64,000 bases of DNA. It comes from Entomortierella parvispora E1425. Its lineage: Eukaryota > Fungi > Mortierellomycota. Location of the stretch: contig BQFW01000014.1 in the NCBI GenBank assembly GCA_020891255.1, positions 806,001 to 870,000 of the forward strand. The letters run 5' to 3'. Made by a program: the position numbers and the translations under genes. Under the pieces are notes generated by a model. That model was not told the DNA's origin and did not search any database. It saw only the letters and a program-made list of their open reading frames with translations. Numbering within the stretch: position 1 is the first letter of the stretch; each line of letters starts with the position of its first letter. Below, piece after piece: positions 5,742 to 33,305 of the stretch.

Positions 5742-7845
5742 ATGAGCTCGTTCAAGAAACGCGTCCCTTCCGCTCAGGCGAGTCTACCTGCAGGATGTCG
5801 ACTGTCAGCGTACAATGGACAAGTGCTGATCTCTACAGGCGTGCCTTCTCTGGACGATATCCTGGGCGGAGGACTGCCCGTGGGAACAATTCTCTTGATC
5901 CAGGAGGATCGTCAGACCTCTTATGGCCAGTTGCTGTTGAAGTACTTTTTGCGACAGGGCATTGTAGCCGGCGACAAGTGTGTGGTGGTCAGTGGAGACG
6001 AAAGACCAGAGGCGATCGTACGGTCCTTGATGGGGATCGCAGGCGAGGAGAGTCTGTCAGGTTCAGTCCAGCAGGGAGTCGATAACCGGGACGATGACGA
6101 GGAAGAAAAGGCAAACCAAAGGAGAAACAGAGCCAAGGGAGCAAGCGGTTCGTCTTCTGCTTTGGACGACGAAGATTCTGAACAGGATCGATTGACGATC
6201 GCATGGCGATACAGTGGCCTCAAGAAGTTTGAGAGTGGTGTCGGAACCCGCCCACCAGGTAATTCAAAGTACAATTGGAAATGGGAGCCAGGATCCGATG
6301 TTGGACAGGGAAGAAAAGAACCAATGGTATGATACGAAAAAAGAGCATTGCCCTAACTCTATGTCCTCCTTTCTAGCCATTTCGTCTAGAGTGAACAAAG
6401 GAGGCGCTAGTAACAATGGATCCGAGCCAGCTCTGACTCCCAGCCAGATCCCATTCTGTGAACAATTCGATCTGACAACAAGGATCTCTGCAAAGGCACT
6501 GGAGACCGCCGACACGACCCTGATCGACTCTGGCGAGTTACTGCGGAACAAACTCTCGGACAATGATAACACGGATGACAGCGACGATGACGATGAAGAT
6601 GAAGACAATTATACTGCGCAACGGGCGGAACGTCAGCCTGATCAGTATCGCAATGTCCTGGACAAGATCCGTGAGACGTTGATCGAAGGAGGATTCAGCA
6701 CCACATTGGTCAAAGACCCATCTGCAGCTCCTGCAGCTGCCACCCCAGGAGCATTGGCAGAGCGTCATATCTGCAGAATTGGTATCAACTCGATTGCTTC
6801 GCCCAGTTGGAGAAGTAAAACACCACAGGTACAGCCCTCCCTTCCCTTCCCCTTCAACGTGAGCACACAGTATGAGGAGGACGAAAAACAAAAACAACAA
6901 TTATTTAGCTTTGTGCTACATTTGCACTGCAACGGAAGATCTGATAATCCATATCCTCCTCCGTTCTTTGAAACATAGGATCTCTACAAATTCTTGCATG
7001 CCCTTCGTGGACTTTTGCGTTTCAGTTTCGGAGCCGCAGTCATCACTATCCCAGCTCATCTGTACGGCACCATTGACCAACGCCATGCCACGGATGGATC
7101 AACGTCCTCTCCTTTTATTCATCGACTGGAGCAGCTCTGTGATGCCTCTGTCCGGATCGAATCCTTTGCTGGAGCTTTAACCAATGCTTCTTCTGCCGCC
7201 TCTGCTTATCATGGATTGTTCCACGTTCACAAAATTCCAGTGCTGAACTCGTTGATCCCTTCTTCTACAAAGCTTTCTGTCCTGTTGGACGGTGCTGCCA
7301 AGGGTTCTGGTGGCGCAAGTGCTTCGAGCAATGGTTCTGGAGGATCTAGTAAGGGCGTGAATAACCTGGGATTCAAGGTTAGGAGGAAGCGGTTCGCAAT
7401 CGAGACGTTCCATTTGCCCCCAGAGGGAGGCGTGGGACAGAGACGCACCTCCTCAGAGCCTTCGTCGACCTCTTCTTCACTCTCGGATCGCAAGGGTGCC
7501 TCTGGATCGTCATCGTCATCCTCATCCTCATCTTCTTCAATGGCGCCTAAGAAGCTGTCATCTGGAACTGAAGGCAGCGGTAGATCAAGGTCTCTTGGCG
7601 GCAGTGGCAACAAGGGAGCAACAGGACAAGTGGATGTGCACTCTGTCCCAGGCGCAAGTGGTGTGGCTCGCAAGATGATGGGTCTTCCTCCCAAGGGCAT
7701 CCAGGGTGCTGTGGCATCCGGTTGTAGTACTGGAGGGTCTGATGGCCAAGAACATCAACATTCACATGCCCATGGATCATCGTCATCCTCCTCTCAAAGA
7801 CCAGGTGTGAACCTTGGCGCCAACAGCAGTTTGCTCGACTTTTAA
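5742..7845 (+). CDS. ELP4: Elongator complex subunit 4 (PAXNEB)
   Basis: Exons 5742-6258, 6377-6828 and 6979-7845. Motifs ISTGVPSLDDILGGGLP, LLLKYF, LTIAWRY, RIGINSIASPSW, KFLHALRGLLR and NNLGFKVRRKRFAIETFHLPPE are typical of Elp4. Confidence 0.92.
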
Positions 7846-8076
7846 TAGAGTCAATTGAAGTCAAAATAAAAACCCACCCGCATGTATCATATCAAGTCCT
7901 TCAAGATCTTTTTGTCTATAGTTTCATTTAATTACAAGGTCATCAAGAAGTAAAAAGAAAAAAAAAGAAAGAAACGAAAGCTGAATGGGTTGGGGGGATA
8001 TGTAAGTGGTAACTTTTTCACAAGCATTAAAAAAAAACAAAATGAATCATCTAAAAAGTTATTTTTCTCTTTGTTT

Positions 8077-27414: not shown

Positions 27415-28531
27415 TTAGGAGATCAAAGGGAACATGGCCTTGCGACCACGGGGATAGTCCGAAAAGTCCTTGCGGTAGCTGCGGTGCTTCTTAAGCGCCC
27501 AGATATACATCTGACCGACGGCGACGACAAAGAACAAATGGGCAGACCAGGACATAGTCAGGACAGAGACTGCCAACCAGGACAGGGTCTCGAAAAAGTA
27601 GTTGGGGCAGGACACAAGATCAAATCCATATCCACGGGGAATCTTGCGGACACGGGTGCCAGGAGGACGAAGGTTACGGAGGGTGACATGGGTATGGAAG
27701 TTGGACAGCTCAGCAAAGATATACAAAGCAATGCATCCATAGACCAAAGCATCGCTCCTCTCGGCCAACTTGGTGCCAGCGGCGTTCCAGGGACCATAGA
27801 CCCAGTAGGCGAGGTTCAAGCCAGACAGCAAATGGTAATGAGCGCTGTTCTTGAAGACGTTGCGGAAGGGCATTGTTCCGTGAGAGAAGCGGTGGACAAA
27901 CACAGTCTCGTACTCGCGCTTCAAGAAGTGAAGCATCACCATCCAGTAAGTAACACTAAGAACGATCCATGAAGAAGCGGGTTAGATCTATTGTAACACT
28001 CCAGATCCAGCTCTTTTGGGTCCAATCTGCGCTATTTTGAGTCCTTACGTCTGCATCCAGCTGTGCTCAAAGGCCTTTCCGTAAAACAAGGAAGGAAGGT
28101 AGTAGACCAAAGGATGAATAACGAGAGGGCCTCCATATTCGATCAAAAAGACAGTTCTCCAGCTGATCTGGGGGCCTGGTTGACAGTTAAAGCAAGATAG
28201 CACAGGATCCAAGCACAGAGATCAGTTCTTTGAGCACTTTGAGCAATTGAGACCTGGGTTCATTCGTCCGACGACTCTCCTGGGACATACCGAGATCCTT
28301 GAACGCCACAGAGTCACCATCCTTGAGGTTGTAGTCAGCGAGGGTCTTGCCGACCTCCAATGCAGTCTTTTCAACGGTCAAGCGCTGACGGTCGGGGTAG
28401 TACTCGGGAAAGCTTTTGGCGATGGCGGCCTTGACGGCGTCGACAGTGACATCCTTGGGCGAGCCAGCGAGGTCGAGAGTAAGAGGGAATTTGCGCGACT
28501 TGGGCGACCGGGGGGTGATGGTCAACTTCAT
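27415..28531 (-). CDS. TSC13: Very-long-chain enoyl-CoA reductase (Tsc13/TECR)
   Basis: Exons 28531-28291, 28175-28049 and 27955-27415. Ubiquitin-like N-terminus, FKDLGPQISWRTVFLIEY, HFLKREYETVFVHRFSHGTMP, FKNSAHY and LVSCPNYFFE. Confidence 0.95.
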
Positions 28532-29430
28532 TGCGGTTGTGGATGTTGATGGAGGGATGGAGAGAAAAAGAAAAAAAAAGACTGATCTCTGTGCCAGCAA
28601 AGCGCACAAGGACGGCTTCTGTAACCCAACAATTTTGGCTTCGGATTCGGTCCTGACAAAGATTCTTTCCCCTGTCTCGTGTCTCGCCTTGGGCGTCGGG
28701 CTTTGCTCCGGGTGGCCAATGTGTGTCTGTTTGTAAATGCGTGCAAAAGCCAAGTAGGCTGCAGAGACGCCGGACAGCGTCTGCCTTGGTCTAAGTCTCG
28801 GCAATGCTTGTGAATGCATTGAAGTAATGTGGACATCGTTCCATCCAAACACTGCCTTTTCTTGCTTTTTGCTATCTTAAAATATAATTGTTCTAGCTTT
28901 TCTCTCTCGCCCAAAGTAACCCTTGTCTATCTCCAAAATGATACATCTTACCATAAAATGACCTTCAGTGGCAACTACAGTTCAATTGCTGGCTGCACTC
29001 GCTATCGACACTCAATTGGTCCCCTTTGTTCAATCTACCACCTGGACACACCAAGAAGATGTGGCAAGATGAAGAAAGGTAATCAAAACCGTAGCTAGAG
29101 GAGATAAGGAACCGGTACCCGGCAGTTCGGTAAGCCCGACTAGCAGTTGCTAGCGCAGTGTTTTGAGCAGGCAGACTTGTCTACGAATATGAGATCGGAT
29201 GGTACATGTTGGGACGATAGCGAAGGAAGACCAAAAAAAGGAACAAAAAAAATAAAAATGGTGGCGTCCTGGGAGGGACTGTCGCGCGTCGCGTCCCCTG
29301 TGTTGTTTGTTTTTGCTGTAAATTAACCTGCTTTTTTTTTGCTGCTTTCGTGTCTTCCTCCGCCATCTGCGTCCCTTCATTCATTCCCATCTCCATCTCC
29401 CATTCCTTCGGCTGTCACTCCCACAGATCC

Positions 29431-32400
29431 ATGGATTCGCCCAACACCACCCCGCCTCGTCGTGACCCAGGCTCGGCCTCTCCCACCAGCTCCGGTCCCC
29501 TTCAGACTCTCAACTCAAGCTTGAAACGCATCCGTCTCGGGGAGAATGCAGGCGACCCAATGACCAGATCAGATTCCTACGACAAGGAATGGGTAAGCGC
29601 ATTCTCAATGCAGGACGCAAATGCCAGCATCCTCTACCCCTTTACTCTCCAAGAGCTCAGTACAACCCATACTCAGTCCTATTGTCAGTCGATACTAACC
29701 AGGGTTGATATCCAACTAACTCTTGTAGAATGCAATCGACTTGGCCGAACTCGACGATTCCGAGGAGGCCGCAACTACTGTCAAGAAAGCTCGCAAAGAG
29801 GTATGACCCTGCTCTCAGAGGAAAGGAGGCACTAATAGCAAGAAATATTGACGATACTGTTGGCACTGACTTGGGCCTCTCTCTATGCTGGATCGATCGT
29901 AGACCGATGAAGTGGACGAGTTGGATTCGGATGACGATTTCGTAAAGGCTGTACCTGAACTGGATGTGAAAGATATGGTCGAGGAACGGTCCATATTCTC
30001 AGAGAATACAATCATGCCAGGACGAACGACAGGGGCAATCCTCGAAAGATCCTTCAAAACAACCACTATAAACAGGACTGTCAAGTCAAAGGGGGCAAAG
30101 CCTACCAGGAACAACAACGGCATGGAGGACGTCTTTACACACGCACAAGTTCGAACATGGTCTGAAGTGCGAGTCAAGACCTGGGAACATCGAAGGACCA
30201 ATACGGAGGGCTTCTATTATCGCTTTGTTGGTAAGTTTTGTGACATCGTCAATCTTACTTCTTAAGTGCAGCAGCATTTGGTGGCGCATCACGTCAACTA
30301 GATCCTGACATTTTTTTTCTTTGGTCACAGATCCCACGGAAGGACAGCAGAATGGACCATGGGGCAAAAAGTCATCAGAGCAGTTTATGGAAAGACTCCA
30401 GGAGTGGAAAGCAAGAGGAATCCGTATCGGAACCTCTTGGGGTATCTTCAGCATGGGTGTCAGCCACAAGGCAGGATATCAGTGTAGCTCCTACTATAGG
30501 AAACTCCTCGAGAACAAGACTCTCACGGATCCGGCGTACGAATGGCAGGGAGGCAAACTCATCATGGTTCACAAATCCAGTGGTGGAGAGATGGCGATTA
30601 GTGGACTGAGCGAAAGATGGGATACACCTGAAGTGAAGGAGATTGAGGCAAATATTAACGGCTGGATCAAGGAATATCACAGCAATATGGCGTAAGTGAT
30701 CGACCTGCTTGAAAAGCTCTGGCTCAAGTCAAAGTTGTATCATGATCTAACTAGTCTTGTCTACTTGGAATATTTCAGAGGTCGGCCAGCAGGTCATAAT
30801 AAGGTGAAAAAGTCCGAGTCGGCGAGCGCTGGATCTGGATCTGGATCTTCTTCGGCAAGCGTAAAGACAACCACAACGTCTATGTCAAGGTCCAGTCTCC
30901 ACTTTAGACCCACCACGGAGGCTCCTCGAGTGAAAGTAACAACGGCACCGGCTGTTCCCAAAGCACTGTCACTCAGACCTAGCAAAAACCAGCCAATTGA
31001 CGAGAGCGAAATGATACCCGTCATTGATATTAATGACAAGTTGGCAGAATACTCATCTTTCATGAAGTAAGTTACAGGGATTACGGCTTTGGCAGTTCTT
31101 GCTGCTGTTCGAGAAGCGAAATGCATTCTTACTTCTGCATGTTACTCTCTAGGAAAACATCAAGTAGCACTGGCAGCATCAGGCAGTCCATGTCTTTTAA
31201 GATCACTGGAACAATAGGCTCTACCACGAGCCCCATTGCAAAAAATATCACCCCAATAGAAGTCAGGAAAGCACCACTAACATCGAGTGGATCCAAGGGA
31301 CAGACAGGTCTTTCATTGTTTTGGAAGAATATCAGGCCTGTGAGAGTGGAATGCCCAGAAGTGCCCCGCTACATTATCCCGAAAGACGTCGAGCAACGAC
31401 CTACTTGGGCCCACAGGATCCAACCCTTTGAGGAGGTATCAACTGCTCTGGTGGAAGGCTCAACGTAAGTCAAAGTTGGATTGAATCACAGCCGTGCAGT
31501 AGACAATCATCTAATGCAGACTTGTTCATTCTCTACTTAGATACAAGGAAGTACGGTCTATGAGTAAACTCGACTGGGCGTCTCTTTCAGAAGGGTTCAG
31601 TGAGCCAATTTCAGATATCCAAGGAATCTTGGCTGATCCACCATGGAACTTTATCGTTGACGATGGACGAAACGATGGCGCCTGTCGGTTAACTATGGCC
31701 GCATTCGAAGGAATCATGGAGAAAGCAATGGAGATGATGCCTAATGGAATCGTCAGTATTTGGACCCATAAGGCCATTTTACCAGAAGTTGTCAGCATCA
31801 TGCATGGACTTGGTACGTTCCCTTTCATTTTTTTTTTTTTTTTTTTTTTCACTCGCTAAATACTTTGCGAGCAAGAATCATCGGTGAGGATGCTAACGCG
31901 TACAGCCCACGCTCTCACGTCTTAGGTTGTCGATATGTCGAGAATTTGGTTTGGTACAAGCTCGGCCTTAACAATGCCAACCTCGACCGTGCCTCCCCTT
32001 ACTTTCGATCATCCAAAGAGATTCTGCTCATGTTCAAGAGGGTACGTCATTGCTGAGCTTTGTGTACCCTTTTTACCAGACACTGACAATATTCTACTCC
32101 ATGAAAACTTTGGAATTTATAGGGCGATGGATTTGATATTCGCCACCAACGTACAGCAGATGTTATCATGGACTTTGAGACGCCCACCACGGCTTGGATT
32201 CACGAAGAGTTTACAGAGCCAAAGCCGGAGGCTGTTTTTGAAATGATGGAGATTATGCTTCCTGATGCACGGTATGTCCCAGAAGTTGGACGAGGCAGGC
32301 TGCTAGAGCTGTGGGCCAAGAAGAGTCAGACCCGCCGTCCTGGATGGATCAGTATTCACGAACAAAAGTTGGCTCTATCGGAGGTTGAGGAGAAAGATGG

Positions 32401-32635
32401 TAACATGACCGAATCGGATGCAAAGGTCGCAATAGAAGTCGCAGTGGACAAGCAGCAGGAGACGGCACTGGGCGTGGATGAGAAACCACTTGAGCTTGAC
32501 ACGGATGGGATCGCGCCTTGTGAAGAGGCCCCTGAGCAATTAGTCTCTGGCAGGAGCACTCCTAACTCTTTGGAGGACCTGGACGAATCTGCCCTCGAAG
32601 CTCTGGTGAGCAACGATATGGATGTAGATGAGTAG
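29431..32635 (+). CDS. MT-A70 family adenine methyltransferase (MTA9/AMT6-7-like) with N-terminal Myb/SANT-like domain, 807 aa
   Basis: Nine exons (29431-29592, 29729-29800, 29903-30230, 30331-30691, 30779-31066, 31153-31464, 31541-31812, 31926-32041, 32123-32635). All junctions are GT-AG and phase-consistent, totalling 2424 nt. C-terminal motifs ILADPPW, IWTHK, YVENLVW, YFRSSKEILLMFKR, IRHQRTADV, LLELWA and RPGWISI. N-terminal segment FYYRFVDP..Q.GPW...F..R.....WGIFSM....GYQCSSYYR. Confidence 0.85.
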
Positions 32636-33305
32636 GTTGCGTCTGCAATCAAAATAAAAACGCGATTTGTATCATCCTGTTATCCTCTTGTCTGATGTTG
32701 AAGTTCTTTCCCCCATCTTCCCCCTCTTTGTCCCGCGAAGTGTATTTTTTTACTTGCCTTGCCGCTTCAGCCTCACTCTTTTTTTTTTTTTTGGTCATGT
32801 AACTCCCACATCTCCTCTTGGTCGTATCCTTCTCCCGTTCCGTCTTGTGCTGTTTCGGTCATCTATACTTTAAGCCCCGCTGTTCGCCATACAGAACGAA
32901 GAACTTATAACATCCCCTGAACCACTCCTCATTGCTGATTTGACTCCCCATCTAGATCTTCCACTCTCTTCACTCTTTCCTGCTTCTCATCCACTGCTCT
33001 CTCGCCGTCCCCCATGGTAATCTGCAGAAAATATATCAAAATTCGAGCACAATTTCATCTCTGGAAGTCCCAATTATTTTTTCCAATCACTAATTCTTTC
33101 TCTCAACGATGAAACGTCATCTGCGTTATTGTTTATAGGTTTTTTTTCCATCGTTTGACGTGTTTTTCGGCGGGAAAACCTCTTTTTTGGCGAGGAAAGC
33201 CATGATCGTGAAAGGGTCATGTATTGATATACCGCAGAGAGAAAAATCTTTCATCAAAGATCAACAAAAACTGGCCAATCAGGTCAGGATCATGCGATCT
33301 TATCA

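What the first reader, a model, noticed from the sequence alone, without database searches (positions are those of the whole stretch)
29431..32635. Single gene fusing a Myb/SANT-like domain to an MTA9-type adenine methyltransferase
Seen: nine exons splice in frame into one 807-aa protein that the ORF track shows only as scattered pieces. Exons 3-4 encode RVKTWEHRRTNTEGFYYRFVDPTEGQQNGPWGKKSSEQFMERL...WGIFSMGVSHKAGYQCSSYYRKLL, with the Trp/aromatic spacing of a Myb/SANT helix-turn-helix. Exons 7-9 encode an MT-A70 domain whose IRHQRTADV...LELWA...RPGWISI tail matches ciliate MTA9 as I recall it. Established: ciliates and several early-diverging fungi write symmetric ApT 6mA with the MTA1c/AMT1 complex, in which MTA9 partners MTA1 and DNA binding comes from separate subunits p1 and p2. 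Inference: here the MTA9-type subunit carries its own DNA/chromatin-binding module, a possible targeting route for 6mA. I cannot confirm that this architecture is undescribed.
Basis: partly seen in the sequence, partly recalled or inferred. Interest (0 to 1): 0.85.

Follow-up and report, generated by a model that had tools for sequence, protein, structure and literature searches.

The report
Fungal Mta9 with built-in Myb domain
This is one nine-exon gene of a Mortierella-type fungus encoding the Mta9 partner subunit of the DNA adenine (6mA) methyltransferase complex, and unlike the well-studied ciliate version it carries a strongly conserved Myb-like domain and an intact catalytic motif, features the papers I could search do not discuss.

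Summary
Nine exons with eight canonical GT..AG introns give a 2,424-nt ORF of 807 aa. A 2,529-nt spliced contig from a related isolate lacks all eight introns, so the Myb and MT-A70 halves lie on one mRNA.

The C-terminal domain is MT-A70 of the MTA9/AMT7 type. A family profile scores 93 bits on MTA9/AMT7, 53 on MTA1, 20 on METTL3 and 13 on METTL4. Residues 189-250 are a Myb/SANT three-helix bundle, supported by an AlphaFold model, by fold hits that are almost all Myb/SANT, by a c-Myb sequence hit at E 8e-4, and by homologs that pass Pfam's Myb threshold.

The fusion is not peculiar to this genome. It occurs in about 35 Mortierellaceae, in Mucorales including Rhizopus, in Calcarisporiella, in Dimargaritales, and very probably in the amoeba Balamuthia. 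The Myb module is at least as conserved as the methyltransferase domain. DPPW is invariant in every family member aligned, whereas ciliate MTA9 has NALW.

UniRef already auto-names some orthologs "Myb-like domain-containing protein". The 6mA papers I searched call fungal Mta9 inactive and never mention the domain.

I read it as an ordinary fungal Mta9 ortholog with an under-described, testable feature. DNA or chromatin binding by the module is inferred, not shown.

The parts
29431..32635 (+). Whole coding region of the Mta9 (AMT6/7-type) gene. It has nine exons and encodes 807 aa plus the stop codon.
   Evidence: Splicing and translation. A spliced 2,529-nt contig of a related isolate covers exons 1-9.
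29431..30115 (+). Acidic, poorly conserved N-terminal region, aa 1-149 (exons 1, 2 and the start of exon 3, with introns 1-2 inside).
   Evidence: Net charge -7, pI 4.75. Only 23-41% identical within Mortierellaceae.
30116..30785 (+). Conserved Myb-like module, aa 150-310. It consists of three short pre-Myb helices, the Myb core, a beta hairpin and a long C-terminal helix. Introns 3 and 4 lie inside it.
   Evidence: Alignment A1 of 22 sequences has 25 invariant columns. AlphaFold model of the Podila ortholog: pLDDT 79.4. Identity is 73-88% within Mortierellaceae and 46-60% to Mucorales, Calcarisporiella and Dimargaritales.
30333..30518 (+). Myb/SANT three-helix core, aa 189-250. Aromatic residues are W198, W224 and Y243. 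W224 to Y243 is 19 residues. The helix 1-2 loop carries a 5-residue insertion. The core is basic (pI 9.7).
   Evidence: Model of the window's own sequence: pLDDT 77.7, helices at aa 200-216, 224-228 and 236-248. Foldseek and AFDB hits are almost all Myb/SANT. c-Myb hit at E 8e-4. Charge.
30786..31306 (+). Basic, Ser/Thr/Pro-rich linker, aa 311-455 (exon 5 and part of exon 6, with intron 5 inside).
   Evidence: Net charge +11, pI 10.3. Weakly conserved outside Mortierellaceae.
31307..31577 (+). Conserved lead-in to the methyltransferase domain, aa 456-520, with the motif LSLFWKNIRP..ECP..IPKDV..PTWAHRIQP.
   Evidence: Alignment. The same motif is seen in Balamuthia P0072.
31578..32359 (+). MT-A70 methyltransferase-fold domain of MTA9/AMT7 type, aa 521-716 (exons 7-9, with introns 7 and 8 inside).
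   Evidence: Orthologs pass the Pfam PF05063 cut-off. Profile A3 against the PDB: MTA9/AMT7 93 bits, MTA1 53, METTL3 20.
31635..31646 (+). DPPW motif, aa 540-543, at the position where Tetrahymena MTA9 has NALW.
   Evidence: Invariant in all 16 aligned family members. Aligned to 'NALW' of MTA9. NALW is described in PMC9852454.
32138..32359 (+). MTA9-specific C-terminal segment, aa 643-716: IRHQRTADV ... KPEAVFEMMEIMLP ... GRGRLLELWAK ... RRPGWISIH.
   Evidence: PDB hits only to MTA9/AMT7-type chains, at E 1e-8 to 3e-7.
32360..32635 (+). Acidic, poorly conserved C-terminal tail (aa 717-807) and the stop codon.
   Evidence: Net charge -21, pI 4.05. 10-23% identity to orthologs.

Best explanation
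Shown here:
- The gene encodes the Mortierellomycotina ortholog of fungal Mta9, which belongs to the AMT6/7 = MTA9 subclade of MT-A70.
- It is a single polypeptide with five regions in order: an acidic N-terminus, a roughly 160-aa Myb-like module, a roughly 145-aa basic disordered linker, an MT-A70 domain with the MTA9-type C-terminal segment, and an acidic tail.
- This architecture is conserved across Mucoromycota and Zoopagomycota, and very probably in the amoebozoan Balamuthia.

Taken from the literature: Mta9/AMT7 pairs with the catalytic Mta1/AMT1 to write symmetric ApT 6mA. In Rhizopus, Mta9 binds Mta1 in a two-hybrid assay and is essential.

Inferred: the basic Myb core and basic linker give this subunit its own contact with DNA or linker chromatin. 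That would add to, or partly stand in for, the contacts that ciliates obtain only from the separate p1/p2 proteins, and would help hold the Mta1-Mta9 dimer on its substrate.

The recognition helix lacks the base-reading Asn/Lys pattern of R2R3 Mybs. I therefore expect low-specificity DNA or nucleosome binding rather than reading of a sequence motif.

DPPW is invariant, so the subunit may also bind SAM or even be catalytic. This is open.
For: Gene model and single transcript.

MTA9-type placement:
- Exon 9 hits MTA9/AMT7 only.
- The Podila ortholog scores E 5e-15 on MTA9 against 3e-4 on MTA1.
- The family profile scores 93, 53, 20 and 13 bits on MTA9, MTA1, METTL3 and METTL4.
- Pfam MT-A70 is above cut-off in orthologs.

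Myb fold:
- AlphaFold models.
- Fold hits almost all Myb/SANT, with TM by query 0.56-0.64 and rmsd 2.0-2.6 A on SNAPC4, RAD, Cdc5 and c-Myb R1/R2.
- c-Myb at E 8e-4.
- Homologs P0110, P0111, P0113 and P0114 match the module profile at E 1e-28 to 1e-14 and pass Pfam's Myb cut-off.
- The nearest ESM Atlas clusters are Myb.

Conservation and charge: the module is as conserved as, or more conserved than, the MTase domain. The core has pI 9.7 and the linker pI 10.3.

Same architecture elsewhere.

Literature: ciliate MTA1 and MTA9 have no nucleic-acid-binding domain and MTA9 has NALW (PMC9852454). AMT7 surface residues contribute to DNA binding (bioRxiv 10.1101/2025.04.24.650485). Rhizopus Mta1-Mta9 interaction and essentiality (PMC12019607).
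Against: - No binding data exist for this module.
- Myb/SANT folds also serve as histone-tail or protein-protein modules.
- Pfam's Myb model stays below its cut-off on this family itself: 6 of 22 members match, best E 4e-4.
- Fold-search E-values are individually non-significant (0.2-2), because the domain is small.
- Unchecked notes of this scan report separate P1 and p2-like genes and a second MTA9 paralog in this genome. The module is therefore probably not a simple replacement for p2.
- Transcript support comes from an assembled contig of a relative less than 90% identical, not from this strain.
- I could not build a phylogeny with reference sequences.
Confidence: 0.6

Rival explanations
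1. The Myb-like module is a SANT-type protein-binding domain. It would dock on histone tails or nucleosomes (for example H3K4me3 or H2A.Z nucleosomes flanking methylated linkers), or on another complex subunit such as the Mta1 N-terminal helix or P1. It would not bind DNA.
For: - Fold hits include many SANT domains: SMARCC, NCoR/SMRT, CoREST, DNAJC2 and MTA1 of NuRD.
- Helix 3 (GYQCSSYYRKLL) lacks the Asn/Lys base-contact pattern of c-Myb and WER.
- 6mA in fungi tracks H3K4me3 and H2A.Z and lies in linkers (PMC12019607).
- The genome is noted to hold separate P1 and p2-like DNA binders (unchecked).
Against: - The core is basic (pI 9.5-10.1 across the family), whereas histone-binding SANT domains are typically acidic. 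That generalisation is my own knowledge.
- The module is followed by a strongly basic linker.
- The best sequence hit is a DNA-binding Myb.
Confidence: 0.25
2. Fungal and amoebozoan Mta9 is itself an active, Myb-targeted adenine methyltransferase. It would act as a second catalytic site in the complex or as a writer of its own. The inert NALW form of ciliates would then be the derived state.
For: - DPPW is invariant in all 16 aligned members, from Mortierellaceae to Mucorales and Dimargaritales, and is present in Balamuthia.
- It aligns with NALW of Tetrahymena MTA9.
- The claim that Mta9 is inactive in fungi is made by analogy in the papers I read. No assay is cited there.
Against: - Conservation of the other SAM-binding residues was not established here.
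- In Mucor, an mta1 DPPW-to-APPW allele fails to complement, and loss of mta1 removes all symmetric sites (PMC11258239). Mta9 therefore cannot do the job alone.
- A DPPW loop can be kept for substrate or structural reasons.
Confidence: 0.2
3. The locus holds two genes, a small Myb-like protein and a separate Mta9, as many JGI gene models of other Mucoromycota suggest. On this reading the 807-aa fusion is a modelling artefact.
For: About 20 short proteins of 157-317 aa consisting of the module alone are deposited for Mucoromycota. One EukProt transcript encodes a complete 317-aa module-only ORF in an unnamed protist.
Against: - The spliced contig joins exons 4-5-6-7 at the predicted junctions.
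- The ORF is open through the linker.
- In Phycomyces the two annotated models leave unannotated a colinear stretch that encodes the conserved linker and the DPPW exon.
- Cunninghamella echinulata has a 601-aa fused model in one annotation and a 185-aa model in another.
- About 40 independent fused models exist.
Confidence: 0.04

Closest known systems
Tetrahymena/Oxytricha MTA9 = AMT7 (and AMT6), non-catalytic partner of MTA1/AMT1 in the MTA1c/AMT1 complex (PDB 7YI8, 9O6K, 9U92)
   Same: - Same MT-A70 subclade by profile score (93 bits against 53 for MTA1).
- Same distinctive C-terminal segment, RHQRT.DV ... E.LLP.A ... LEL.A ... RPGWIS.
   Different: - Ciliate MTA9 has no detectable Myb-like module. 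The module profiles do not hit the full-length chains even at E 10.
- It has NALW instead of DPPW (PMC9852454).
- It carries a large insert within the MTase domain (residues 228-317) that the fungal proteins lack.
Rhizopus microsporus / Mucor lusitanicus Mta9 of the fungal MTA1c (PMC12019607, PMC11258239)
   Same: Same family. The Rhizopus stolonifer protein P0068, Cunninghamella P0008 and other Mucorales proteins have the same Myb-like module, linker, DPPW and MTA9-type tail. The window's gene is the Mortierellomycotina ortholog.
   Different: The difference lies only in what has been described. Those papers and a 2026 review call Mta9 non-active or inactive and assign Myb-like DNA binding to P1 alone. 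They mention neither a Myb-like domain nor DPPW in Mta9. I could not retrieve the exact R. microsporus accessions to confirm that they are full-length.
Ciliate p1/p2 (AMTP1/AMTP2) and fungal P1, the homeodomain/Myb-like DNA-binding subunits of the complex
   Same: They have a helix-turn-helix domain of the homeodomain-like superfold and are associated with the same enzyme. They are a plausible functional analogue.
   Different: No sequence similarity was detectable. The module profiles hit no p1/p2 chain in the PDB at E up to 10. Here the domain sits on the Mta9 polypeptide itself. Fungal P1 is reported to read an AAC motif through two Asn residues, and this module's helix 3 lacks them.
METTL14 (partner of METTL3)
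   Same: Same logic of a second MT-A70 subunit that supports substrate binding for a catalytic partner.
   Different: It acts on RNA, and sequence similarity is very weak (17 bits). METTL14 has a degenerate motif and, from my own knowledge, uses RGG repeats rather than a Myb domain.
Myb-like proteins sharing the W..R..W....N.YYYRF..PGE pre-Myb extension (for example P0110 with a U-box, P0111, P0113, P0114)
   Same: The whole module (pre-Myb helices plus Myb core) is homologous, at E 1e-28 to 1e-14. These proteins pass Pfam's Myb_DNA-binding cut-off.
   Different: They have no MT-A70 domain and lack the 5-residue insertion in the helix 1-2 loop. Their function is unknown.

Membership tests
AMT6/7 (MTA9) subclade of MT-A70 | MT-A70 domain (Pfam PF05063) | tested here: met
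   Orthologs P0002, P0008, P0011 and P0024 score 27.7-36.9 bits against a cut-off of 23.9. The window's domain is 79% identical to that of P0002. Single exon pieces alone give no Pfam hit.
AMT6/7 (MTA9) subclade of MT-A70 | Closer to MTA9/AMT7 than to AMT1/MTA1, METTL3, METTL14 or METTL4 | tested here: met
   Family profile against the PDB: 93 bits for MTA9/AMT7, 53 for MTA1, 20 for METTL3, 13 for METTL4. Single sequence: E 5e-15 against 3e-4. This is a score ranking, not a tree.
AMT6/7 (MTA9) subclade of MT-A70 | MTA9-type C-terminal segment | tested here: met
   Exon 9 matches only MTA9/AMT7-type chains, at E 1e-8 to 3e-7.
AMT6/7 (MTA9) subclade of MT-A70 | Eroded catalytic motif, i.e. a non-catalytic subunit (as described for ciliates) | tested here: not met
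   DPPW is intact at aa 540-543 and invariant in the family, where Tetrahymena MTA9 has NALW. This is a trait of the ciliate members rather than of the clade. Activity itself was not tested.
AMT6/7 (MTA9) subclade of MT-A70 | Placement in the AMT6/7 clade of an MT-A70 phylogeny | not tested
AMT6/7 (MTA9) subclade of MT-A70 | Heterodimer with Mta1/AMT1 | not testable with these tools
   Reported for Rhizopus by two-hybrid assay (PMC12019607). No Mta1 sequence of this genome was available.
Myb/SANT (homeodomain-like three-helix) domain | Three-helix bundle superimposable on Myb/SANT structures | tested here: met
   Model of the window's core has pLDDT 77.7. Nearly all of the top 50 PDB hits and all of the top 30 Swiss-Prot AFDB hits are Myb/SANT, with TM by query 0.56-0.64 and rmsd about 2-2.6 A. 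The best VIA hit is the RAD MYB domain at Z 4.6. Individual E-values are not significant.
Myb/SANT (homeodomain-like three-helix) domain | Match to Pfam Myb_DNA-binding (PF00249) above its cut-off | tested here: not met
   On this family itself only 6 of 22 modules match, with best E 4e-4, all below 24.4 bits.
Myb/SANT (homeodomain-like three-helix) domain | Homology to bona fide Myb domains through intermediates or profiles | tested here: met
   The module profile hits P0110, P0111, P0113 and P0114 at E 1e-28 to 1e-14. These score 25.2-37.5 bits on PF00249 in the aligned region. The core profile hits c-Myb at E 8e-4.
Myb/SANT (homeodomain-like three-helix) domain | Regularly spaced aromatic residues | tested here: met
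   The residues are W198, W224 and Y243. W224 to Y243 is 19 residues. W198 to W224 is 26, which includes the 5-residue loop insertion seen against P0110-P0114.
Myb/SANT (homeodomain-like three-helix) domain | Binds DNA | not testable with these tools
   There is only indirect support. The core has pI 9.7 and net charge +5, and the linker pI 10.3.
p1/p2 (AMTP1/AMTP2) DNA-binding subunits | Sequence similarity to solved p1/p2 chains | tested here: not met
   No p1/p2 chain appears among PDB matches of profiles A1 or A2 at E up to 10.

The most novel reading that the evidence does not exclude
The ancestral AMT6/7 subunit was a Myb-targeted and catalytically competent adenine methyltransferase, and fungi and amoebae still use it that way. 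The fungal complex would then have two active sites, one per strand of the ApT site, and its own chromatin anchor. The inert, domain-less MTA9 of ciliates, on which current models rest, would be a derived simplification.
Probability: 0.15. Interest if true: 0.8.

Novelty: new variant of a known kind. Interest (0 to 1): 0.55.

Why it matters
Current models of eukaryotic 6mA writing come from ciliates. There, MTA9/AMT7 is a domain-less, inactive scaffold and DNA binding is delegated to p1/p2.

The Mta9 of early-diverging fungi differs in two ways. It carries a Myb-like module that is at least as conserved as its methyltransferase domain, and it keeps an invariant DPPW. Symmetric 6mA is essential in at least Rhizopus among these fungi.

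This yields concrete, testable hypotheses about how the fungal complex is held on linker DNA near transcription start sites, and about whether Mta9 is really inactive. The probable presence of the same fusion in Balamuthia suggests that it predates the split of fungi and amoebae.

It also flags a practical problem. Many public gene models cut this gene in two, and Pfam-based surveys miss the Myb domain.

Tried and rejected
- Pfam on the single exon translations gave nothing. The domains are split by introns, and references containing introns are not accepted, so I worked through full-length orthologs.
- A scan of genome contigs with exon 4 found nothing, because that collection is bacterial and archaeal.
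- An RNA-run search listed none. Transcript evidence came only from a run of unknown kind from a diverged isolate.
- PDB sequence searches with exon 4 or the whole module returned only GH11 xylanases at E 0.02-0.3. I regard this as a chance similarity of about 50 residues.
- Foldseek with the whole 166-aa module gave no significant match. The 72-aa core was needed.
- I considered that the module is the 'missing p2' of fungi. There is no sequence link to p1/p2, and a p2-like gene is noted in this genome (unchecked), so I lowered that idea.
- I tried to map MTA1's SAM-contact residues onto the family from the HMMER alignment. The register was ambiguous, so I make no claim.
- Look-up of Balamuthia P0072 failed; P0073 worked.
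- Supplements of PMC12019607 are not held, so I could not check that paper's Mta9 domain drawing.
- No MT-A70 tree was built, because no reference sequences were retrievable.
Full report
**Observation.** The region reads as a typical fungal intron-rich gene. This gives 2,424 nt with one terminal stop, i.e. 807 aa. All eight introns (76-136 nt) are GT..AG.

**One transcript or two.** No RNA run of this strain was listed. A wider search gave DNA runs of the strain plus runs carrying the same species label but less than 90% identical. Laid on the locus, run X10 holds a single 2,529-nt contig. It starts 53 nt upstream of the ATG and ends 40 letters past the stop codon.
- Its pieces lie on exon 1 and on exons 3-9, with introns 3-8 removed at the predicted borders. 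For example, it skips 100 nt at 30229/30330 and 81 nt at 32040/32122, both GT..AG.
- Seven contig letters bridge 31810 to 31931, which fits removal of intron 7 exactly.
- Seventy-two contig letters sit where exon 2 belongs.
- Contigs of X4, X5 and X9 keep the introns, so those runs are genomic.

This is an assembled contig from a relative, not a long read from this strain.

**The methyltransferase half.**
- Exon 9 alone matches Tetrahymena MTA9/AMT7 and a related chain at E 1e-8 to 3e-7, and matches no MTA1 chain.
- A search of 1.8 billion representative proteins with exon 7 returned only 27 hits. Among them were four full-length proteins of 601-893 aa.
- All four carry Pfam MT-A70 above its cut-off. 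All four also carry, upstream, the same block that exons 3-4 encode.
- The Podila epigama ortholog scores E 5e-15 on MTA9 against 3e-4 on MTA1.
- A 15-sequence profile of the domain scores 93 bits on MTA9/AMT7, 53 on MTA1, 20 on METTL3 and 13 on METTL4. METTL14 appears only at 17 bits, with the N-terminal half-profile.

I could not build a tree, because no reference sequences were retrievable. The ranking and the MTA9-specific tail place the protein in the AMT6/7 subclade and not in the RNA clade.

**DPPW.** The motif DPPW (aa 540-543, window 31635-31646) is invariant in all 16 aligned family members. It aligns with the 'NALW' of Tetrahymena MTA9. The structural paper describes NALW as an eroded motif with no SAM bound (PMC9852454).

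**The Myb half: sequence evidence.** Residues 150-310 form a block with 25 invariant positions across 22 sequences from Mortierellaceae, Calcarisporiella, Dimargaritales, Mucorales and Balamuthia.
- Pfam's Myb model reaches only sub-threshold scores on it: 6 of 22 members match, best E 4e-4.
- A profile of the block finds other proteins at E 1e-28 to 1e-14 (P0110, P0111, P0113, P0114). These do pass Pfam's Myb cut-off in exactly the aligned region. They differ from this family mainly by lacking a 5-residue loop insertion.
- The core profile hits c-Myb at E 8e-4, then WER, B-Myb, SNAPC4 and DNAJC2.
- The nearest ESM Atlas clusters are Myb clusters, with scores 0.92 and 0.89.

**The Myb half: structural evidence.**
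- The AlphaFold model of the ortholog's module has pLDDT 79.4.
- The model of the window's own core has pLDDT 77.7 and shows three helices at aa 200-216, 224-228 and 236-248.
- With the core model, nearly all of the top 50 PDB matches and all of the top 30 Swiss-Prot AlphaFold matches are Myb/SANT domains. TM by query is 0.56-0.64, and rmsd is 2.0-2.6 A on SNAPC4, RAD, Cdc5 and c-Myb R1/R2.
- The Foldseek-independent search puts the RAD MYB domain first at Z 4.6.
- Each E-value is weak, as expected for about 55 residues. The consistency of the hits is what counts.

The core is basic (pI 9.7). It is flanked by three short pre-Myb helices, a beta hairpin and a long helix, and is followed by a linker of pI 10.3.

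**How widespread the architecture is.** The fused architecture occurs in:
- about 35 Mortierellaceae species, Calcarisporiella, and three Dimargaritales genera;
- Mucorales, including Cunninghamella, Thamnidium, Apophysomyces and Rhizopus stolonifer, and Dimargaris.

About 20 module-only proteins in JGI annotations look at first like separate genes. In Phycomyces, however, the two annotated models leave unannotated a colinear stretch that encodes the conserved linker and the DPPW exon. Cunninghamella echinulata has a 601-aa fused model in one annotation and a 185-aa model in another. I therefore read these short proteins as split gene models.

In Balamuthia mandrillaris the annotated Myb-like protein stops at a TAA that lies inside a GTAAC donor. 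A 66-nt GT..AG intron with a TTCTAAC branch site would join it in frame to an MT-A70 ORF. That ORF carries DPPW and the MTA9-type tail and begins about 110 nt downstream. The fusion is therefore probably older than the fungi.

The module is at least as conserved as the MTase domain. Identity to the window is 80-88% against 73-84% within most Mortierellaceae, and 54-60% against 47-54% for Calcarisporiella and Dimargaritales. The exception is Cunninghamella, at 46% against 55%.

**What is known.**
[quoted passage not shown] It also states that AMT6/7 lack the catalytic motif (PMC7145601).
- A 231-species survey singles out AMT2/5 as 'exceptional' for having extra (ZZ) domains (PMC12695648).
- The fungal papers and a 2026 review call Mta9 non-active or inactive, and assign Myb-like DNA binding to P1 (PMC11258239, PMC12019607, PMC13297926).
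- Full-text searches for MTA9, AMT6 or AMT7 together with Myb found no paper describing a Myb domain in this subunit.
- UniRef automatic names already label several orthologs 'Myb-like domain-containing protein'. The feature is therefore visible in databases but, as far as I could search, undiscussed.

**Mechanism.** Shown: one polypeptide, a real Myb-like fold, an MTA9-type MT-A70 domain, DPPW kept, and deep conservation. Inferred: the basic Myb core and linker give Mta9 its own hold on DNA or linker chromatin, supplementing P1.
- The recognition helix lacks the Asn/Lys base readers of R2R3 Mybs. I therefore expect low-specificity binding.
- A SANT-like protein or histone contact is the main rival.
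- Catalytic competence is a second, non-exclusive possibility.
- Unchecked notes of this scan report P1, p2-like and second-MTA9 genes elsewhere in this genome. This argues against the module being a plain substitute for p2.

**Verdict.** The gene is the ordinary fungal Mta9 ortholog, not a one-off fusion. The interest lies in the family-wide, under-described difference from the ciliate model.

Noticed in passing
L002:6001-8783 (Phycomyces blakesleeanus); also proteins P0074-P0090: Many public gene models of Mucoromycota cut this gene into a module-only protein and a C-terminal fragment. In Phycomyces the conserved linker and the DPPW exon (about 6960-7900) are in no model.
   Followed up: partly
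L001:8991-9849 (Balamuthia mandrillaris JAVKOQ020000309.1): The annotated stop of the 'Myb-like' gene lies inside a GTAAC splice donor. A 66-nt intron would extend the protein in frame into an unannotated MT-A70 domain carrying DPPW.
   Followed up: yes
proteins P0110, P0111, P0113, P0114, P0098: The same extended Myb module (pre-Myb W..R..W....N.YYYRF plus core) occurs without MT-A70. It is found once with a U-box (P0110), and as a complete 317-aa ORF in a EukProt transcriptome (P0098). Their organisms and functions are unknown.
   Followed up: partly
window 30342-30500 (aa 192-244): About 50 residues of the Myb core resemble the C-terminal strand region of GH11 xylanases, including the motif AWKSHGMNLGSSW (E 0.02-0.3 in three searches). 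The folds are unrelated, so I take this as chance.
   Followed up: partly
window 29300-32800, runs X4, X5, X9, X10: Runs filed under the same species label as the window's strain differ from it by more than 10% across this gene, including in the exons. The label seems to cover more than one lineage.
   Followed up: no
window 31821-31850 and 32780-32793: There are long T runs, about 28 T in intron 7 and 14 T in the 3' flank. The read-laying tool skipped these as repeats.
   Followed up: no
window 28187-28852 (- strand): The upstream ORF on the minus strand contains a short ubiquitin-like-looking segment (MKLTITPRSPK...DYNLKDGDSVAFKDLG). It is probably the first exon of the divergently transcribed neighbouring gene. 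I did not analyse it.
   Followed up: no
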